Virus record (IMG/VR): IMGVR_UViG_3300011113_000805
Location: 62,001 to 126,000 of that record
Direction: 5' to 3' (one strand)
DNA: 64,000 bases
The position numbers and the translations under genes are program-made. Of the stretch, positions 19,088-64,000 are shown piece after piece. Each line of letters starts with the position of its first letter. Positions within the stretch are counted from its first letter, which is position 1. The notes under the pieces were generated by a model. It was not told the origin of the DNA. It searched no databases and saw only the letters and a list, made by a program, of their open reading frames with translations.

Positions 19088-19095
19088 TAGGTATT
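19088..19095 (-). promoter_or_regulatory. Late promoter-like motif AATACCTA
   Basis: 19 nt before the gp13-like ATG, just downstream of a terminator. Confidence 0.5.
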
Positions 19096-19112: not shown

Positions 19113-19144
19113 AAAAAACGACAACAGGGACCGCAAAGTCCCTG
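19113..19144 (-). terminator. Intrinsic terminator after the decoration-like gene
   Basis: CAGGGAC-TTTGCG-GTCCCTG followed by TTGTCGTTTTTT on the minus strand. Confidence 0.75.
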
Positions 19145-19161
19145 CTGAAGACAATATGTGT

Positions 19162-19614
19162 TTAGGCGCTAATTACGGTAACCCATCCACGTGTTGCTCC
19201 GGTAAAGATAAAGACTGTTGTCTTTGAAGCAATTACAACAGTTGCATTACCCGATGTGTCAGGATCAGTTCCATTAATTTTGTCAGTTCCTGTAGTGTAA
19301 ACTTTAGCAGCGTTTGCACTCAAATTGCTGACAATTCGTACATCACCTGCCACACCGGCCGGAAGCTTCAGGCCATCATTAGCATTTCCAACTGTCGCAA
19401 TTGTAACAACATTTGTGATAGCAGTTGATCCAGCCTCGGTTTGTGTTGTACCTGCTGTCTTTGCACCAATATCTGTTAGGCCGAAAGTTGAAGCAAGTGA
19501 AACGGCTCCGGAGGCTGTCAGGCCTCCTGTAAGTGTCAAATCACTAGTGACTTCAAAACCTGAACCTGCTTCCTGAACGAGACCCTTTGCTGCTGTGTAT
19601 ACTACTTTTGGCAT
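19162..19614 (-). CDS. Head decoration / head fibre-like protein (150 aa)
   Basis: Start MPKVVYTAAKGL at 19614 with SD AAGGAGG. Thr/Gly/Ala-rich beta-type sequence, located between the capsid and neck genes. Confidence 0.55.
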   Translation of the reverse strand: MPKVVYTAAKGLVQEAGSGFEVTSDLTLTGGLTASGAVSLASTFGLTDIGAKTAGTTQTEAGSTAITNVVTIATVGNANDGLKLPAGVAGDVRIVSNLSANAAKVYTTGTDKINGTDPDTSGNATVVIASKTTVFIFTGATRGWVTVISA

Positions 19615-19689
19615 GTGATCCTCCTTTTGGCCGAATGCTTCCGATCCCCTGTCGGTGTCAGGTTGATCACAATGGATCGGGCTTATCGG
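19614..19689 (-). promoter_or_regulatory. Structured 5' leader (stem plus possible pseudoknot over the start codon)
   Basis: CCGATCC/GGATCGG stem with an inner CCTG/CAGG stem. The bulge TGTGATC is complementary to GATCACA, which spans the SD-ATG junction. Confidence 0.5.
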
Positions 19690-19697
19690 TAGGTATG
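19690..19697 (-). promoter_or_regulatory. Late promoter-like motif CATACCTA
   Basis: Directly upstream of the structured leader. Confidence 0.4.
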
Positions 19698-19712
19698 CAA
19701 GCCGGTGAATAC

Positions 19713-19731
19713 TTTTCACAAAAGGTGAAAA
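19713..19731 (-). terminator. Weak hairpin after the endonuclease gene
   Basis: TTTTCAC-CTTTT-GTGAAAA; A/U-rich stem with no good U-tract. Confidence 0.3.
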
Positions 19732-19740
19732 ATGCCGTAA

Positions 19741-20538
19741 TCACACCGCGCCGTAGTTGATGACCTCGAAGGAGGCACCGTTATCGAGGCACCACTGGGC
19801 CGTCGCCTGCCACTTCTCGTGATCTACCGATGTCGTGTGACCCTTCACTTCGTAGAGTGTCTTACCATCAAGTGTGAGGAAGTCTGGGATGTAGGTGCGC
19901 TCGACTCCCTTCGGATCGATGTAGGAAATGCGAATGTCGTGCTGCTTCGTGATGGGTAAGCCGGCGCTGATGCAAGAGTCCAGGAATCGTGTCTCCCAGG
20001 AAGAGTGCATATACTCCTCCCTGCCCGTGAATGGGTTGAGCTTCCACTCGGCCCTGTAGGGAGCTTGAGGACCGATCTTTCCCTGTTCGAGGAGGTCAAT
20101 GGCTCGATCTGTCTGGCGCTTTCTCTTCTCTGCCGACTCGGGCTTTTGCCAGTTTTCAGAGTTTGTCTTGGCTGATCGCTTTCTGACTTCGGGTGTTATA
20201 TGTGATCGCATTAATGCAGCTTGTGCTATAGTTTTTTCTTTATTTTCATTGTAATAGCGCTCTAAATTTTGACGATTTTTAGCACCGATCTTGGCCTTAG
20301 ATTCGGCAGTCAAACGACCTTTGATCCTTGCTGAGTGTCCGTGAATGTATCGAAGAAACCTCATACCTTGAGATTTAGAGAAAGGTGCATCTTGACCACA
20401 CCCACACTCACATTTTGGAGGGACACCTCCGTAAAAATGTTTCAATAGATAGCTCTCGTAAGAGAGGCCATGGCATCTGGACACGTGTGAGGCTAAACGC
20501 TCAAATGACTTAAAACAAAGTTTGCATGTAGTTTCCAT
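19741..20538 (-). CDS. Free-standing putative homing endonuclease: Zn-finger/NUMOD-like N-terminus plus TnsA-like PD-(D/E)xK nuclease
   Basis: CKLC...H...H and PPKCECGCG motifs, a basic linker, then YMHSSWETRF...YIPDF...LYEVKG. Confidence 0.7.
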   Translation of the reverse strand: METTCKLCFKSFERLASHVSRCHGLSYESYLLKHFYGGVPPKCECGCGQDAPFSKSQGMRFLRYIHGHSARIKGRLTAESKAKIGAKNRQNLERYYNENKEKTIAQAALMRSHITPEVRKRSAKTNSENWQKPESAEKRKRQTDRAIDLLEQGKIGPQAPYRAEWKLNPFTGREEYMHSSWETRFLDSCISAGLPITKQHDIRISYIDPKGVERTYIPDFLTLDGKTLYEVKGHTTSVDHEKWQATAQWCLDNGASFEVINYGAV

Positions 20539-20591
20539 ATTTAGATAATATTCAACTCTATTCCGACATAAACCTCCGCGCTAAAATAGAA

Positions 20592-20618
20592 GCGGTGCCA
20601 CTACGAGAGTGGCACCGC
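20592..20618 (-). terminator. Intrinsic terminator after the major capsid gene
   Basis: 10-bp stem GCGGTGCCAC/GTGGCACCGC, 7-nt loop, then TTCTATTTT. Confidence 0.8.
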
Positions 20619-20634
20619 CAATATTAGTTGCAAC

Positions 20635-22640: not shown

Positions 22641-24476
22641 TCAGGCCTTTCCGTTCCCGATGCCGGCCAGAACAGCCCAGCGATCAGTCTCACCGACGGA
22701 TTCATTAATCATGCCACCTGGCCTCGTCGATCTTGAGGAGCTGCCCACTGTCCTGTTCGTCCCCTCTGAAAGATTACCTGATGCCTTGGAAAGGGATTCA
22801 TTCAGGCTCTTGTAGAGGAGGTTCGCCTCTCTAATAGTCTTTGCAGAGTCGAGAGCCTCGACAACAGCTTTCAGTTTGGACTGGGGTAGAGCTGTGTTCT
22901 GCATCAACTTGTTGACAAACAGAAGCTTGGCGTTGAACAGCTTCTGTTCTTTGAGCTCGCGGCTAAGCCCTTCTAATGCCGCAGTCGCCTCTTTAAGACG
23001 ACCCATGAGAGCTCGATTCTTGCGAGCCTCCTTTACTGCCTCATCCTTGGCCTCATCTGCCTTCTTCTCGGCGTCCTTGGCCTTTTTCTTGGCTTCTTTG
23101 AGTTTTTCGTTCTCAGAGACATTTGCATTGAGTTCGACATCATCGTAAGCCTTAAACTTCTTCTCGGGGGTACCACCAAATGCATGACCAGGTTCAATCT
23201 CCTCACGGAGACGACGTGAACGAAGACGATGAAGTTCACGACGAAGCATGTTTTCATTGATGGTGTAGACTGTTCCGGAACGACGACGACGGGACTCCAT
23301 GTGCATACCTTCATTATCCATCTCGTCCATATCGTCCATCTCGTCCATATCGTCCATCTCGTCCATCTCATCCATCTCGTCATAGAGACTGCCCTCTGGC
23401 ATATCATCCATCTCCATGGACATCTCTTCGTCCATCTCTAGCTTAATCTCGTCATCACCACCTTCATCATCAGCGGCCATTTCCTCATCATCACCTGCAG
23501 GTGCAACCTGCATTCCAACTGCTGCGGCAAGTGACTCAATAGCCGACTTCACGGCATTGACATCGACTTCGGCTTCACCGTCATCACCATCATCAGCAGC
23601 CTCATCGCCTTCATCATCACCACCTTCATCATCGGCAGCCTCATCATCGGCAGCCTCATCATCGGCAGCCTCACGAAGACGGTTGGCTCTCTTTGCTTTC
23701 TCTTCACGCTCAAGAAGTGTACGTAGTAGTGACCTAGTTGACATTTGCTTAATCTCCTTTAGTAGCAGGTTCATTTCTCTTGCCGATGCCTCTTGCAACT
23801 CACCTCGAGGAAGGGTGTTTAATTCACCCTGAAAACCTAAAGACTTGCGCAAGATGTTATTGAAGCTCTCGACAATTCGAAGTGCAGCTTTACCTGTGCT
23901 CCTGCCTTCATTAAGGGCGCCGAGGGCCCTTCCAATTAGTTTTAGCTCCATTCGTGTTTCACGAATACGGTCACGCAGACCGCCCTTGCCATCGATTATC
24001 CCCAGAAGGGTATTTATCGATTCATTTGTAAGGACAACACCCTCATCAGTGAGCATTTTGCCACCTAAGGAGTCTCCTTCGAACTCTATGTTAATTTTCT
24101 TAACACCGTCAGATGGAAGTGTGATTGTACCACCCTTCGAGAAAGATCCTAGACCGAAGTCGCCAGTATCCTTGTCGGTGCCATCAAAATCATCCTCTTC
24201 CTCTTCTTCAAATTGATCTTCGCCCATCTCATCATCGTCAAGATCATCCATGTCACCTTGCATGGGCTCTTCAATATCTAGGTCGTCAGGATTTTCGAGT
24301 GAATTGACAATTGAATCAATATCCTCATCATCATCAGCTTCCCTAACAAGTTTCTTCTCGACAAGTTTTCTGATTCTTGGGGCGACAGCCTCAATGAGCT
24401 TATTGGTGGCATTTTCCTCAGCCATCCTCACAAGCTCCTTGGCGTCAGCTATTGCTTCATCGTATAATGATGACAT
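22641..24476 (-). CDS. Prohead core / scaffold protein (T4 gp22-like)
   Basis: Very acidic with a coiled-coil C-terminus (LKEQKLFNAKLLFVNKL, AKTIREANLLY, RWAVLAGI). It lies directly upstream of the capsid gene; ATG at 24476. Confidence 0.8.
   Translation of the reverse strand: MSSLYDEAIADAKELVRMAEENATNKLIEAVAPRIRKLVEKKLVREADDDEDIDSIVNSLENPDDLDIEEPMQGDMDDLDDDEMGEDQFEEEEEDDFDGTDKDTGDFGLGSFSKGGTITLPSDGVKKINIEFEGDSLGGKMLTDEGVVLTNESINTLLGIIDGKGGLRDRIRETRMELKLIGRALGALNEGRSTGKAALRIVESFNNILRKSLGFQGELNTLPRGELQEASAREMNLLLKEIKQMSTRSLLRTLLEREEKAKRANRLREAADDEAADDEAADDEGGDDEGDEAADDGDDGEAEVDVNAVKSAIESLAAAVGMQVAPAGDDEEMAADDEGGDDEIKLEMDEEMSMEMDDMPEGSLYDEMDEMDEMDDMDEMDDMDEMDNEGMHMESRRRRSGTVYTINENMLRRELHRLRSRRLREEIEPGHAFGGTPEKKFKAYDDVELNANVSENEKLKEAKKKAKDAEKKADEAKDEAVKEARKNRALMGRLKEATAALEGLSRELKEQKLFNAKLLFVNKLMQNTALPQSKLKAVVEALDSAKTIREANLLYKSLNESLSKASGNLSEGTNRTVGSSSRSTRPGGMINESVGETDRWAVLAGIGNGKA
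23317..23383. repeat. Imperfect 9-bp tandem repeat encoding (DEM/DDM)n
   Basis: Units tccatctcg/tccatatcg, about 7 copies, within the scaffold gene. Confidence 0.75.
23626..23673. repeat. Perfect 15-bp tandem repeat x3 encoding AADDE
   Basis: tcatcatcggcagcc at 23626, 23641 and 23656. Confidence 0.9.
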
Positions 24477-24494
24477 CACCAATCTCCGTGTTTC

Positions 24495-63092: not shown

Positions 63093-64000
63093 TCACTCTC
63101 CAAAAATTCTCTTTGACCTGATACTAGGTATCTGAGCTTCCCTGGCATCCATTGCAGCCTTTAGTGCATTTGCCGCAGCATTAAGTTGTGGTGATGGGGC
63201 CCCATAGCCAGGTGTTGTGTGAGTTAGCACCGTGTCACAGAATGTTCTAATATCAGCCATGGTTGTCCTAAGAAGTGATTCTAGTTGTGCATATAGAATG
63301 TAAGGCTGGGTTGATCCTGGGGCTTCTGGGTCGCCATCACCGGCACCACCATCTAAAGAGTGACGACCAATATGAACTTGCCTTCCCGATATCTGAATGG
63401 TACCATCAGGAAGGATGATGATTGCTGCGAGGTCGTCACTTTTATTTCCTTCCTTGATAATTCGAATGGTTCCATTGATTCCGTGGATCTCATCTTTTCT
63501 TGCAATGAGCCGAAGCTGATCAGCCTTGACTCCTACAGCTGCACCTGAAGTATCAGTTAGAACTTGTCCCTCGAATGTTGTTGGGGTAAAATTACTTGTG
63601 CCAAAGTTGAAGTCTATTCCAGTCCGCTGTGAGACATAGATTCTAGCAGCATCATCGAGAAAGTCTGCATCACCCTCGACAGGAAGTGTGCCATCAAAGT
63701 CCTCAATTCTCTTTGAAACCTCAACAAACCTTCTGCGATTTGCCCTGAGAGGTGGAACTGTTCTATTCTCTATTTCGCCATTCTGTATCCACCGAGACCT
63801 GCCGGCAACTATATCAACTGTTCCTGAGAATTCGCCTGGTATCCTTGAGGAGACTGATGTCACACTTTCTTCAGGTTTGTCAGTGGGTGCCCATCCCCTA
63901 TCGGTTGTTAATGCAATGGCAGCATTGTTTGAACCGTGAATTACGAAATCACCAGGCCTCTTTATGTACCTTGGAACAGGTTCAAATCGTGTTAGCGGAA
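63093..64000 (-). CDS. Baseplate central spike (gp5/VgrG-like), 5'-truncated by window edge
   Basis: The frame stays open from 63863 to the window end (PLTRFEPVPRYIKRPGDFVIHGSNNAAIAL). It has spike-like beta segments (VKADQLRLIAR, TIRII, GTIQISG) and lies upstream of the gp25/gp6-like genes. Confidence 0.7.
   Translation of the reverse strand, partial: PLTRFEPVPRYIKRPGDFVIHGSNNAAIALTTDRGWAPTDKPEESVTSVSSRIPGEFSGTVDIVAGRSRWIQNGEIENRTVPPLRANRRRFVEVSKRIEDFDGTLPVEGDADFLDDAARIYVSQRTGIDFNFGTSNFTPTTFEGQVLTDTSGAAVGVKADQLRLIARKDEIHGINGTIRIIKEGNKSDDLAAIIILPDGTIQISGRQVHIGRHSLDGGAGDGDPEAPGSTQPYILYAQLESLLRTTMADIRTFCDTVLTHTTPGYGAPSPQLNAAANALKAAMDAREAQIPSIRSKRIFGE

What the first reader, a model, noticed from the sequence alone, without database searches (positions are those of the whole stretch)
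19614..19697. Pseudoknot-like 5' leader that can occlude the start codon of the decoration gene
Seen (minus strand): CATACCTA ccgataagc CCGATCC attgtgatcaa CCTG acaccga CAGG GGATCGG aagcattcggccaaaAGGAGGatcacATG. A 7-bp stem is continued by a 4-bp stem, with an 11-nt one-sided bulge. The bulge contains TGTGATC, the exact complement of GATCACA, which covers the end of the SD and the A of AUG. GATCC in the 5' arm can alternatively pair with GGATC at the SD. This 75-nt leader is much longer than the usual 15-24 nt here. Established: T4 gene 32 autoregulates through a leader pseudoknot. Inference: this may be an undescribed cis-regulatory RNA switch matching decoration protein output to capsid supply.
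Basis: partly seen in the sequence, partly recalled or inferred. Interest (0 to 1): 0.66.

Follow-up and report, generated by a model that had tools for sequence, protein, structure and literature searches.

The report
Conserved double-pseudoknot leader masking a start codon
The leader of a small late gene next to the capsid gene of an uncultured freshwater phage folds into a conserved double-pseudoknot RNA that pairs with its own start-codon region; the same RNA is found in more than 60 related phages, matches no described family, and most likely controls translation of that gene.

Summary
On its own it is not convincing: its folding energy lies within the range of shuffled sequence. Comparison settles it. 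More than 60 distinct leaders from freshwater and marine viral contigs keep four helices through compensatory changes:
- a 7-bp stem (P1);
- a 3-5 bp hairpin (P3);

On 63 sequences, 96.8% of P1/P3/PK2 cells pair, 14 of 15 pairs change on both sides, and 0 of 500 shuffles match this. P2 takes at least eight distinct complementary forms.

The strand order is that of the HDV-ribozyme fold, but two defining ribozyme features are not met. A T4-late-like ATAnnTA heptamer sits at a fixed distance upstream, so the RNA probably starts 4 nt before P1. The element always precedes genes whose products begin MPKVxYTxxKGL. Rfam has no match.

Most likely this is a cis-acting translational operator that sequesters the initiation region. 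Its effector is unknown. The "decoration" label and autoregulation are untested.

The parts
19690..19696 (-). Promoter-like heptamer ATACCTA (family consensus ATAnnTA), 5 nt upstream of the inferred transcript start
   Evidence: ATAnnTA lies at a fixed 5-nt spacing before A-R-G-C + P1 in 50 of 58 leaders, and TAnnTA in 57 of 58. ATAC(C/A)TA also lies upstream of three other genes in intergenic gaps of the window. Its function as a promoter is inferred by analogy with the T4 late promoter TATAAATA.
19681..19684 (-). Inferred 5' end of the mRNA, AAGC (consensus A-R-G-C); +1 is probably A19684
   Evidence: Position -4 is A in 100%, -2 is G in 100% and -1 is C in 93% of 58 leaders. The start site is inferred and has not been mapped.
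19674..19680 (-). P1, 5' arm (CCGAUCC)
   Evidence: Always 7 bp. 98.9% of cells pair, and 6 of 7 pairs change on both sides. RNAalifold predicts it independently.
19665..19671 (-).
   Evidence: It pairs with 19620-19614. Variants elsewhere: GUGAAC/GUUCAC, GUGAAU/AUUCAC, GAAAC/GUUUC, UAAUC/GAUUA, GCAUAA/UUAUGC and others. Partner-swap test: 0 of 100000. Pair 21-71 is AU in 15 and UA in 11 sequences.
19659..19662 (-). P3, 5' strand (CCUG)
   Evidence: All 4 pairs change on both sides. Predicted by RNAalifold.
19652..19658 (-). L3 hairpin loop ACACCGA; its last four bases CCGA (19655-19652) are the 5' strand of PK2
   Evidence: PK2 cells pair in 98.8%, and all 4 pairs change on both sides. At least 12 complementary variants were seen.
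19648..19651 (-). P3, 3' strand (CAGG)
19641..19647 (-). P1, 3' arm (GGAUCGG), 0-2 nt after P3
19635..19640 (-). Invariant unpaired linker AAGCAU (consensus A-A-K-C-W-U)
   Evidence: A1, A2, C4 and U6 are each 100% conserved in 63 leaders whose helices have fully diverged.
19631..19634 (-). PK2, 3' strand (UCGG), followed by a conserved A-(G)-C-A-A in relatives (CCAAA here)
19620..19625 (-). Shine-Dalgarno AGGAGG. It is left in the loop between PK2 and P2; its last G is the first base of the P2 3' strand.
   Evidence: Read directly from the sequence.
19614..19620 (-). P2, 3' strand (GAUCACA): the SD-AUG spacer plus the A of AUG
19162..19614 (-). Regulated gene P0001 (150 aa, MPKVVYTAAKGLVQE...), function unknown
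   Evidence: Translation. No Pfam or PHROG family. Every motif instance precedes a gene of this N-terminal type.
19122..19147 (-). Intrinsic terminator after P0001; closes a monocistronic unit
   Evidence: 11-bp stem followed by a T run.
20591..20619 (-). Intrinsic terminator after the capsid gene; in relatives it directly precedes the promoter-like heptamer
19741..20538 (-). Context only: TnsA-like endonuclease ORF inserted between the capsid terminator and the leader's promoter
   Evidence: Pfam PF08722 at 3e-8. Relatives lack 19687-20631.

Best explanation
The element is the 5'-terminal leader of a short monocistronic late mRNA (promoter-like heptamer, about 70-nt leader, 150-aa gene, terminator). 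It folds into a compact nested double pseudoknot with four helices:
- P1, 7 bp.
- P3, a hairpin abutting the P1 3' arm.
- PK2, the P3 loop paired with a stretch 6 nt beyond P1.
- P2, the junction between P1 and P3 paired with the SD-AUG spacer or the start codon itself.

Because the core is transcribed first, it can capture the initiation region as soon as that region emerges. The 30S subunit then cannot place the start codon until P2 opens. The element is therefore most likely a cis-acting translational operator. It either sets or gates how much MPKV-type protein is made from an abundant late transcript. As a by-product it buries the 5' end of the mRNA.

The invariant unpaired bases (A-R-G-C at the 5' end, A-A-K-C-W-U, and C-A-A) point to a precise tertiary fold that an effector could stabilise or open. 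That effector might be a phage or host protein, possibly the gene's own product, or a small ligand.

What is shown: the four helices, their conservation, and the strict link to this gene family.
What is inferred: the transcript start, repression of translation, and the existence and identity of an effector.
For: Structure:
- P1, P3 and PK2 on 63 distinct leaders: 96.8% of cells pair, 14 of 15 pairs change on both sides, 0 of 500 shuffles reach this, and slid controls reach at most 43%.
- RNAalifold finds P1 and P3 on its own.
- With P2 added, on 26 freshwater leaders: 98.2% paired, 12 pairs with double-sided changes, 0 of 500 shuffles.
- Partner-swap tests. For P2, the summed duplex energy is -98 for own partners against -56 +/- 7.5 permuted (0 of 100000). 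For PK2 it is -72 against -35 +/- 7 (0 of 100000).

Link to initiation:
- The P2 3' strand always overlaps the initiation region (-10 to +4). This holds although the distance from PK2 to the SD varies by about 30 nt and the P2 register shifts between subfamilies. That argues selection acts on masking the start site.

RNA on the sense strand, and non-coding:
- G.U pairs make up 88 of 1342 helix positions, so the pairing works on the sense RNA only.
- 54 of 63 leaders carry an in-frame stop, so the leader is not coding.

Transcript context:
- A promoter-like heptamer lies at fixed spacing.
- Terminators lie on both sides.

Specificity:
- One copy in the 257-kb genome.
- Always upstream of MPKV-type genes.
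- Invariant linker bases.
Against: - No expression or probing data exist. The only RNA-library runs are contigs of relatives and show no ends.
- The single-sequence fold is not unusually stable.
- The SD itself is unpaired, and in the window's subgroup only the A of AUG is inside P2. Occlusion may therefore be partial.
- No conserved alternative (ON-state) structure was found.
- Some MPKV-type genes lack the element, including a 73%-identical full-length orthologue (L004) and the second copies of tandem pairs.
- A strong SD combined with a repressing fold is an odd pairing unless something relieves the repression, and that something is unknown.
Confidence: 0.6

Rival explanations
1. Small-molecule riboswitch. 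The conserved core (P1, P3, PK2 and the invariant linkers) is an aptamer, and ligand binding stabilises P2. This would turn translation off in the way the SD-sequestering pseudoknot riboswitches (SAM-II, preQ1-II) do.
For: The linker nucleotides are invariant although the helices have diverged completely. The architecture is a pseudoknot-only expression platform with no alternative hairpin. The element is compact, at about 55 nt. It is spread across marine and freshwater phages.
Against: The regulated gene is a non-metabolic, probably virion-associated protein with no ligand logic. There is no match to any riboswitch model, even at E of 10 or below. The element is tied to a single gene family, whereas most riboswitch classes control several kinds of gene (the latter point is general knowledge, not tested here).
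Confidence: 0.13
2. Pure 5'-end protector. The fold exists to bury the 5' terminus and the AU-rich leader of a very abundant late mRNA from 5'-end-dependent RNases. Pairing with the start region only closes the knot and has no regulatory meaning.
For: The structure begins about 4 nt from the inferred 5' end. The transcript is monocistronic and ends in a strong terminator hairpin, which is the classic layout of stable mRNAs.
Against: A simple 5' hairpin would be enough for protection. It does not explain why the P2 3' strand tracks the start codon through register shifts and 30-nt spacer changes. It also does not explain the invariant unpaired bases.
Confidence: 0.12
3. Self-cleaving ribozyme of the HDV fold. 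The RNA cleaves 5' of P1 and leaves a 5'-OH mRNA whose ribozyme body overlaps the start site.
For: The strand order is that of HDV-like ribozymes, with a 7-bp P1 abutting a 3-5 bp P3. The first two PK2 pairs are nearly invariant C-G, as in P1.1. A C-A-A follows the P1.1-like strand in 61 of 63 leaders, which recalls the catalytic C of J4/2 (PMC10879173). HDV-like ribozymes are known in phages.
Against: The first P1 pair is C-G in 59 of 63 leaders, not the G.U wobble. The P1.1 analogue is 4-6 bp and offset by a 6-nt linker. There is no P4. The candidate C is separated from the P2 3' strand by 6-35 nt and is missing in L011 and L137. No HDV-family Rfam model matches. With the start site inferred 4 nt upstream, cleavage would remove only 4 nt.
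Confidence: 0.06
4. Not a functional RNA: chance complementarity, a DNA-level inverted repeat, or an N-terminal extension of the ORF (GTG at 19719 is in frame).
For: Single-sequence z-score is only -1.25. A 185-aa ORF spans the leader. One database gene call extends into it (P0006).
Against: Covariation in four helices. G.U pairs that would be C.A on the other strand. Indels that are not multiples of three, and in-frame stops in 54 of 63 leaders.
Confidence: 0.01

Closest known systems
HDV-like self-cleaving ribozymes (HDV, CPEB3, drz-Mtgn, phage theta ribozymes)
   Same: Nested double pseudoknot with the same strand order: P1, P2, P3, L3, P3', P1', loop partner, P2'. P1 is 7 bp and P3 is 3-5 bp, abutting P1. 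Two near-invariant C-G pairs join L3 to the downstream strand. A C-A-A follows that strand. These ribozymes occur in phages.
   Different: No G.U wobble at the base of P1. The loop helix is 4-6 bp and set off by an invariant 6-nt linker. No P4. The P2 3' strand is the translation start region, far from the candidate C. No Rfam HDV model matches. Cleavage is untested and unlikely.
E. coli rpsO (ribosomal protein S15) translational operator
   Same: A leader pseudoknot whose downstream strand lies in the initiation region, with the SD in a loop. It controls initiation rather than transcription.
   Different: The rpsO operator is a simple H-type pseudoknot in equilibrium with hairpins, and it is bound by the gene's own RNA-binding product. 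Here the fold is a double pseudoknot, no alternative fold is conserved, and no RNA-binding activity of the product is known. This comparison rests on textbook knowledge and was not tested here.
T4 gene 32 autoregulatory leader pseudoknot
   Same: A phage mRNA with a pseudoknot near its 5' end, linked to translational control.
   Different: In T4 the knot lies well upstream and nucleates cooperative binding of the single-strand-binding protein over an unstructured start region. Here the knot itself contains the start region, and the product has no SSB-like family hit.
SD-sequestering pseudoknot riboswitches (SAM-II, SAM-V, preQ1-II)
   Same: Small pseudoknot-only elements that mask the initiation region and have no separate terminator or anti-terminator.
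   Different: No sequence or model match. Different topology. The downstream gene is not metabolic. No ligand is known.
Catalogue of 8,495 unnamed candidate structured RNAs from IMG/VR (PMC10690425)
   Same: Same data source and the same kind of object: covarying intergenic motifs within 25 nt of phage gene starts.
   Different: That paper does not describe this motif in its text. Its alignments are not held here, so overlap could not be checked. That pipeline does not model pseudoknots.

Membership tests
HDV-like self-cleaving ribozyme | Nested double pseudoknot with helices P1, P2, P3 and a loop-L3 helix in the canonical strand order | tested here: met
   All four helices are supported by covariation, in that order.
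HDV-like self-cleaving ribozyme | G.U wobble as the first pair of P1 at the cleavage site (+1 G) | tested here: not met
   The first pair is C-G in 59 of 63, U-G in 2 and U-A in 1.
HDV-like self-cleaving ribozyme | Catalytic cytosine at the first position of J4/2, just 5' of the P2 3' strand (PMC10879173) | tested here: inconclusive
   A C lies 1-2 nt after the loop-helix strand in 61 of 63 leaders. It is 6-35 nt away from P2 3', and it is absent in L011 and L137.
HDV-like self-cleaving ribozyme | A 2-bp P1.1 immediately 3' of P1, and a P4 hairpin | tested here: not met
   The loop helix is 4-6 bp, lies after an invariant 6-nt linker, and there is no P4.
HDV-like self-cleaving ribozyme | Site-specific self-cleavage | not testable with these tools
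   Needs an in vitro transcription assay.
Any Rfam 15 family (riboswitches, ribozymes, leaders) | Score at or above a family's gathering threshold | tested here: not met
   No hit overlaps the leader in the window or in 19 related loci, even at E of 10 or below.
T4 gene 32-type autoregulation | The product is a single-strand nucleic-acid-binding protein that binds its own leader | tested here: not met
   P0001 has no Pfam or PHROG family and its AlphaFold model is poor. Binding itself is not testable here.
Initiation-region pseudoknot operator (rpsO type) | The downstream strand of the pseudoknot lies within the ribosome-binding site | tested here: met
   The P2 3' strand maps to -10..+4 in all 63 leaders.
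Initiation-region pseudoknot operator (rpsO type) | A trans-acting protein stabilises the knot and blocks initiation | not testable with these tools
   No RNA-protein tool and no expression data are available.
T4-type late promoter | An A/T-rich -10 element (TATAAATA type) about 6 nt upstream of the start, without a -35 element | tested here: met
   ATAnnTA lies at fixed spacing in 50 of 58 leaders. The same heptamer lies before three other genes in the window.
T4-type late promoter | A phage gp55-like late sigma factor encoded in the genome | tested here: inconclusive
   Only a weak, collinear phrog_234 match (E 0.003-0.04) to a 244-aa ORF just outside the window. The T4 gp55 protein itself finds nothing.

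The most novel reading that the evidence does not exclude
The leader is a new class of active RNA built on the HDV-type nested double pseudoknot. One reading is a ligand-sensing riboswitch that gates translation of a virion-associated gene. The other is a P4-less self-cleaving ribozyme variant that makes a 5'-OH mRNA whose body overlaps the start codon.
Probability: 0.18. Interest if true: 0.88.

Novelty: new variant of a known kind. Interest (0 to 1): 0.64.

Why it matters
Few phage translational operators are known (gene 32, regA, gene 43, the RNA-phage coat-protein operators). All were found in cultured model phages. This is a well-supported new one from uncultured aquatic phages, defined purely by covariation and spread across marine and freshwater lineages.

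Its fold is unusual: an HDV-type nested double pseudoknot used to hold a ribosome-binding site. Its invariant unpaired bases suggest a specific partner.

It gives RNA biologists a compact object of about 70 nt that can be tested directly for ligand binding, protein binding or catalysis. It also marks a conserved promoter-leader-N-terminus module that phages appear to reuse with different C-terminal domains.

Tried and rejected
- Single-sequence folding: not significant, and the MFE picks a subgroup-specific alternative helix.
- Rfam at permissive thresholds on the window and on 19 loci: nothing overlaps the leader.
- Cultured-phage database searched by DNA and by protein, with both the freshwater and the marine versions: no match. 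The nearest cultured phages by capsid protein (Flavobacterium phage immuto, Microcystis phage Mel-JY01) lack both the gene and the leader.
- Sequencing runs: only contigs were available, so there are no 5' ends and no expression evidence.
- AlphaFold2 of P0001: mean pLDDT 57, too poor for a fold search.
- ESM Atlas and PHROGs on relatives: hypothetical viral proteins only.
- Coding reading of the leader: rejected.
- The second weak model hit, at window 63434-63513 (E 0.14): it lies inside a coding region and does not show the motif.
- Supplementary alignments of the IMG/VR csRNA catalogue: not held.
- Complex prediction was not used, because no protein-protein binding is claimed.

Full report
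**Observation.**
The start codon is 19614-19612. The gene (P0001, 150 aa, MPKVVYTAAKGLVQE...) runs to 19162.

The stems and the bulge complement are all there:
- CCGATCC (19680-19674) pairs with GGATCGG (19647-19641).
- CCTG (19662-19659) pairs with CAGG (19651-19648).
- The bulge holds TGTGATC (19671-19665), complementary to GATCACA (19620-19614).

Taken alone the fold is not remarkable. RNAfold gives z = -1.25, 21 of 200 shuffles fold as well, and the MFE uses a different local helix. Rfam finds nothing.

**Surroundings.**
All of the following lie on the minus strand, listed from upstream to downstream:
- A Gp23-type major capsid gene at 22589-20664 (Pfam 2e-74).
- A strong terminator at 20619-20591.
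- A TnsA-like endonuclease ORF at 20538-19741 (PF08722 3e-8).
- The leader, then P0001.
- A second strong terminator at 19147-19122.

P0001 has no Pfam or PHROG family. Contigs of relatives in two DNA runs and one RNA-library run join 19686 to 20632 with 100 other letters between. The endonuclease is therefore a polymorphic insertion between the capsid terminator and the leader's promoter. In relatives without it, the terminator is followed directly by the leader.

**Relatives.**
Three IMG/VR scans gave more than 60 distinct leaders, from freshwater and marine viral contigs:
- one with a leader word;
- one with only the N-terminal codons of the gene, which is unbiased with respect to the leader;
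- one with a marine leader word.

Every true instance sits directly upstream of a gene whose product begins M-P-[KRT]-x-x-x-[TS]-x-x-K-G-L-x-Q. No cultured phage in the GenBank collection has the gene or the leader. A covariance model finds one copy in the window's own 257-kb virus record.

**Structure.**
A structural parse of all leaders and a MAFFT alignment of 63 distinct ones show four helices:
- P1 is always 7 bp. Variants include CCAAUCC/GGAUUGG, CCAGCCU/AGGCUGG, CCGGCAC/GUGUCGG and CCCUAGC/GCUAGGG.
- P3 is a 3-5 bp hairpin ending 0-2 nt before the P1 3' arm.
It pairs the last 4-6 bases of the hairpin loop with a stretch that starts 6 nt after P1. Variants include CCGA/UCGG, CCACA/UGUGG, CUGC/GCAG, UCGC/GCGA, CCCG/CGGG, CCCA/UGGG, CUAC/GUAG, UCCC/GGGA and GCGC/GCGC.
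Variants include GUGAUC/GAUCAC, GUGAAC/GUUCAC, GUGAAU/AUUCAC, GAAAC/GUUUC, UAAUC/GAUUA, GCAUAA/UUAUGC, GCAUAAUA/UAUUAUGC and CUUU/AAGG.

The counts are as follows:
- For P1, P3 and PK2 on 63 sequences: 96.8% of cells pair, 14 of 15 pairs change on both sides, and 0 of 500 column shuffles reach the observed values. Sliding the partners by 1-3 columns drops pairing to 24-43%.
- RNAalifold predicts P1 and P3 independently.
- On 26 freshwater-type leaders with P2 included: 98.2% pair, with 12 double-sided pairs. One P2 position is A-U in 15 sequences and U-A in 11.
- The P2 register differs between subfamilies, so it was also tested by swapping partners among 16 representatives. Own partners sum to -98 kcal/mol; permuted partners give -56 +/- 7.5, and 0 of 100000 permutations are as low. 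PK2 gives -72 against -35 +/- 7.

Two further results fix this as non-coding sense RNA. G.U pairs make up 88 of 1342 helix positions, so the pairing works only on the sense RNA. And 54 of 63 leaders carry an in-frame stop, so the leader is not coding.

**5' boundary.**
ATAnnTA lies at a fixed 5-nt spacing before an A-R-G-C that directly precedes P1, in 50 of 58 leaders; TAnnTA does so in 57 of 58. In the window, ATAC(C/A)TA also precedes three other genes in the few intergenic gaps. One of these is the next gene, at 19094-19088.

By analogy with the T4 late promoter (TATAAATA, start about 6 nt downstream; established knowledge), the transcript probably starts at A19684, 4 nt before P1. This is an inference:
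- A gp55-like sigma factor was found only as a weak hit just outside the window.
- No read ends are available.

**Conserved unpaired bases.**
The linker after P1 is A-A-K-C-W-U, with four positions invariant. After PK2 comes A-(G)-C-A-A in 61 of 63 leaders. The SD lies between PK2 and P2 and is not paired in the freshwater group.

**Mechanism.**
The distance between PK2 and the SD varies by about 30 nt, and the P2 register shifts. Even so, the P2 3' strand always falls between -10 and +4 of the start codon. That is the strongest argument that selection acts on masking the initiation region.

The core is transcribed first, so it can trap the start region as that region emerges. The best reading is therefore a cis-acting translational operator at the extreme 5' end of a monocistronic late mRNA. 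Whether it is constitutive or opened and closed by a partner is open. The invariant linkers favour a specific partner or a demanding tertiary fold.

Autogenous control by the product is attractive, because the RNA co-occurs strictly with the conserved N-terminal ~20 residues while the rest of the protein varies. It is untested, however. The same pattern is expected if promoter, leader and N-terminal anchor are simply inherited as one module.

**Comparison with known systems.**
The strand order, the 7-bp P1 abutting a short P3, the two near-invariant C-G loop pairs and the following C-A-A all match the HDV-ribozyme fold. HDV-like ribozymes are known in phages. Several points argue against membership:
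- The G.U wobble at the cleavage site is absent (C-G in 59 of 63).
- The loop helix is longer and is offset by the invariant linker.
- P4 is missing.
- The candidate C is far from the P2 3' strand and is absent in two leaders.
- With the inferred start site, only 4 nt would be removed by cleavage.

I therefore do not file it as an HDV-like ribozyme, but I keep catalysis as a low-probability reading.

Functionally it resembles initiation-region pseudoknot operators such as E. coli rpsO, and SD-sequestering pseudoknot riboswitches. It shares only the general theme with T4 gene 32. A catalogue of 8,495 unnamed IMG/VR motifs (PMC10690425) may contain it, but its alignments could not be read.

**The gene.**
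'Decoration protein' is unsupported:
- AlphaFold2 gives pLDDT 57.
- The ESM Atlas and PHROGs give only hypothetical viral proteins.
- The C-terminal domain of P0001 recurs behind different N-termini (P0016-P0022).
- The N-terminal ~22 residues recur in front of different C-termini.

Its position beside the capsid gene, its late-type promoter and its own terminators make a virion-associated protein plausible. Nothing more can be said.

**Verdict.**
- The element is a new, well-supported structured leader RNA: a new variant of the known kind 'initiation-region-sequestering leader'.
- Its effector is unknown.

Noticed in passing
window 19687-20631 (ORF 19741-20538, minus strand): A 265-aa ORF with a zinc-finger-like N-terminus and a TnsA-like endonuclease C-terminus lies between the capsid terminator and the leader's promoter. 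Contigs of relatives in three runs lack this 945-nt segment and hold 100 other letters there. It looks like a free-standing homing-endonuclease-type insertion.
   Followed up: partly
window 19088-19094, about 25924, about 32852 (minus strand): ATAC(C/A)TA heptamers lie 23-39 nt upstream of three other gene starts, in the few intergenic gaps. This may be the late promoter of this phage group, a T4 TATAAATA analogue.
   Followed up: partly
L129, L132, L133, L169, L184 (tandem genes): Several relatives carry two MPKV-type genes in tandem. Only the first has the leader; the second follows directly with its own SD.
   Followed up: no
P0001 versus P0016-P0022, and L009:3001-3882: The protein is modular. 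The first ~22 residues (MPKVVYTAxKGLxQExGSGF) recur in front of unrelated C-terminal parts. The C-terminal domain of P0001 recurs behind a different N-terminus (M..THFKGP...).
   Followed up: partly
L004:2900-3003: A 73%-identical orthologue of P0001 in a 187-kb contig has no match to the RNA model. It still has GUAAUU upstream that is complementary to AAUUAC just before its AUG, and an ATATTTA heptamer. It may be a diverged leader or chance in AT-rich sequence.
   Followed up: no
marine leaders, e.g. L009:2960-2995, L010:2960-2995: The longer marine spacers hold a pyrimidine patch (UCUC, CCUC or CUCU) that could pair with the SD. The mean duplex energy is -3.6 kcal/mol against -2.1 for shuffled spacers, which is weak.
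   Followed up: partly
L009:702-2725: The capsid gene of this marine relative is split into two ORFs (702-1328 and 1370-2725). This could be a frameshift, an assembly error or an intervening element.
   Followed up: no
G000:C1:126870-127604 (just beyond the window's end), = L361:1294-2028: A 244-aa ORF gives a weak but collinear match to the T4 gp55 late-sigma family (phrog_234, E 0.003-0.04).
   Followed up: partly
window 22641-24482 (minus strand): A 613-aa, extremely acidic, repeat-rich ORF (D/E/M runs) lies directly upstream of the capsid gene. It is probably a scaffold or prohead core protein.
   Followed up: no
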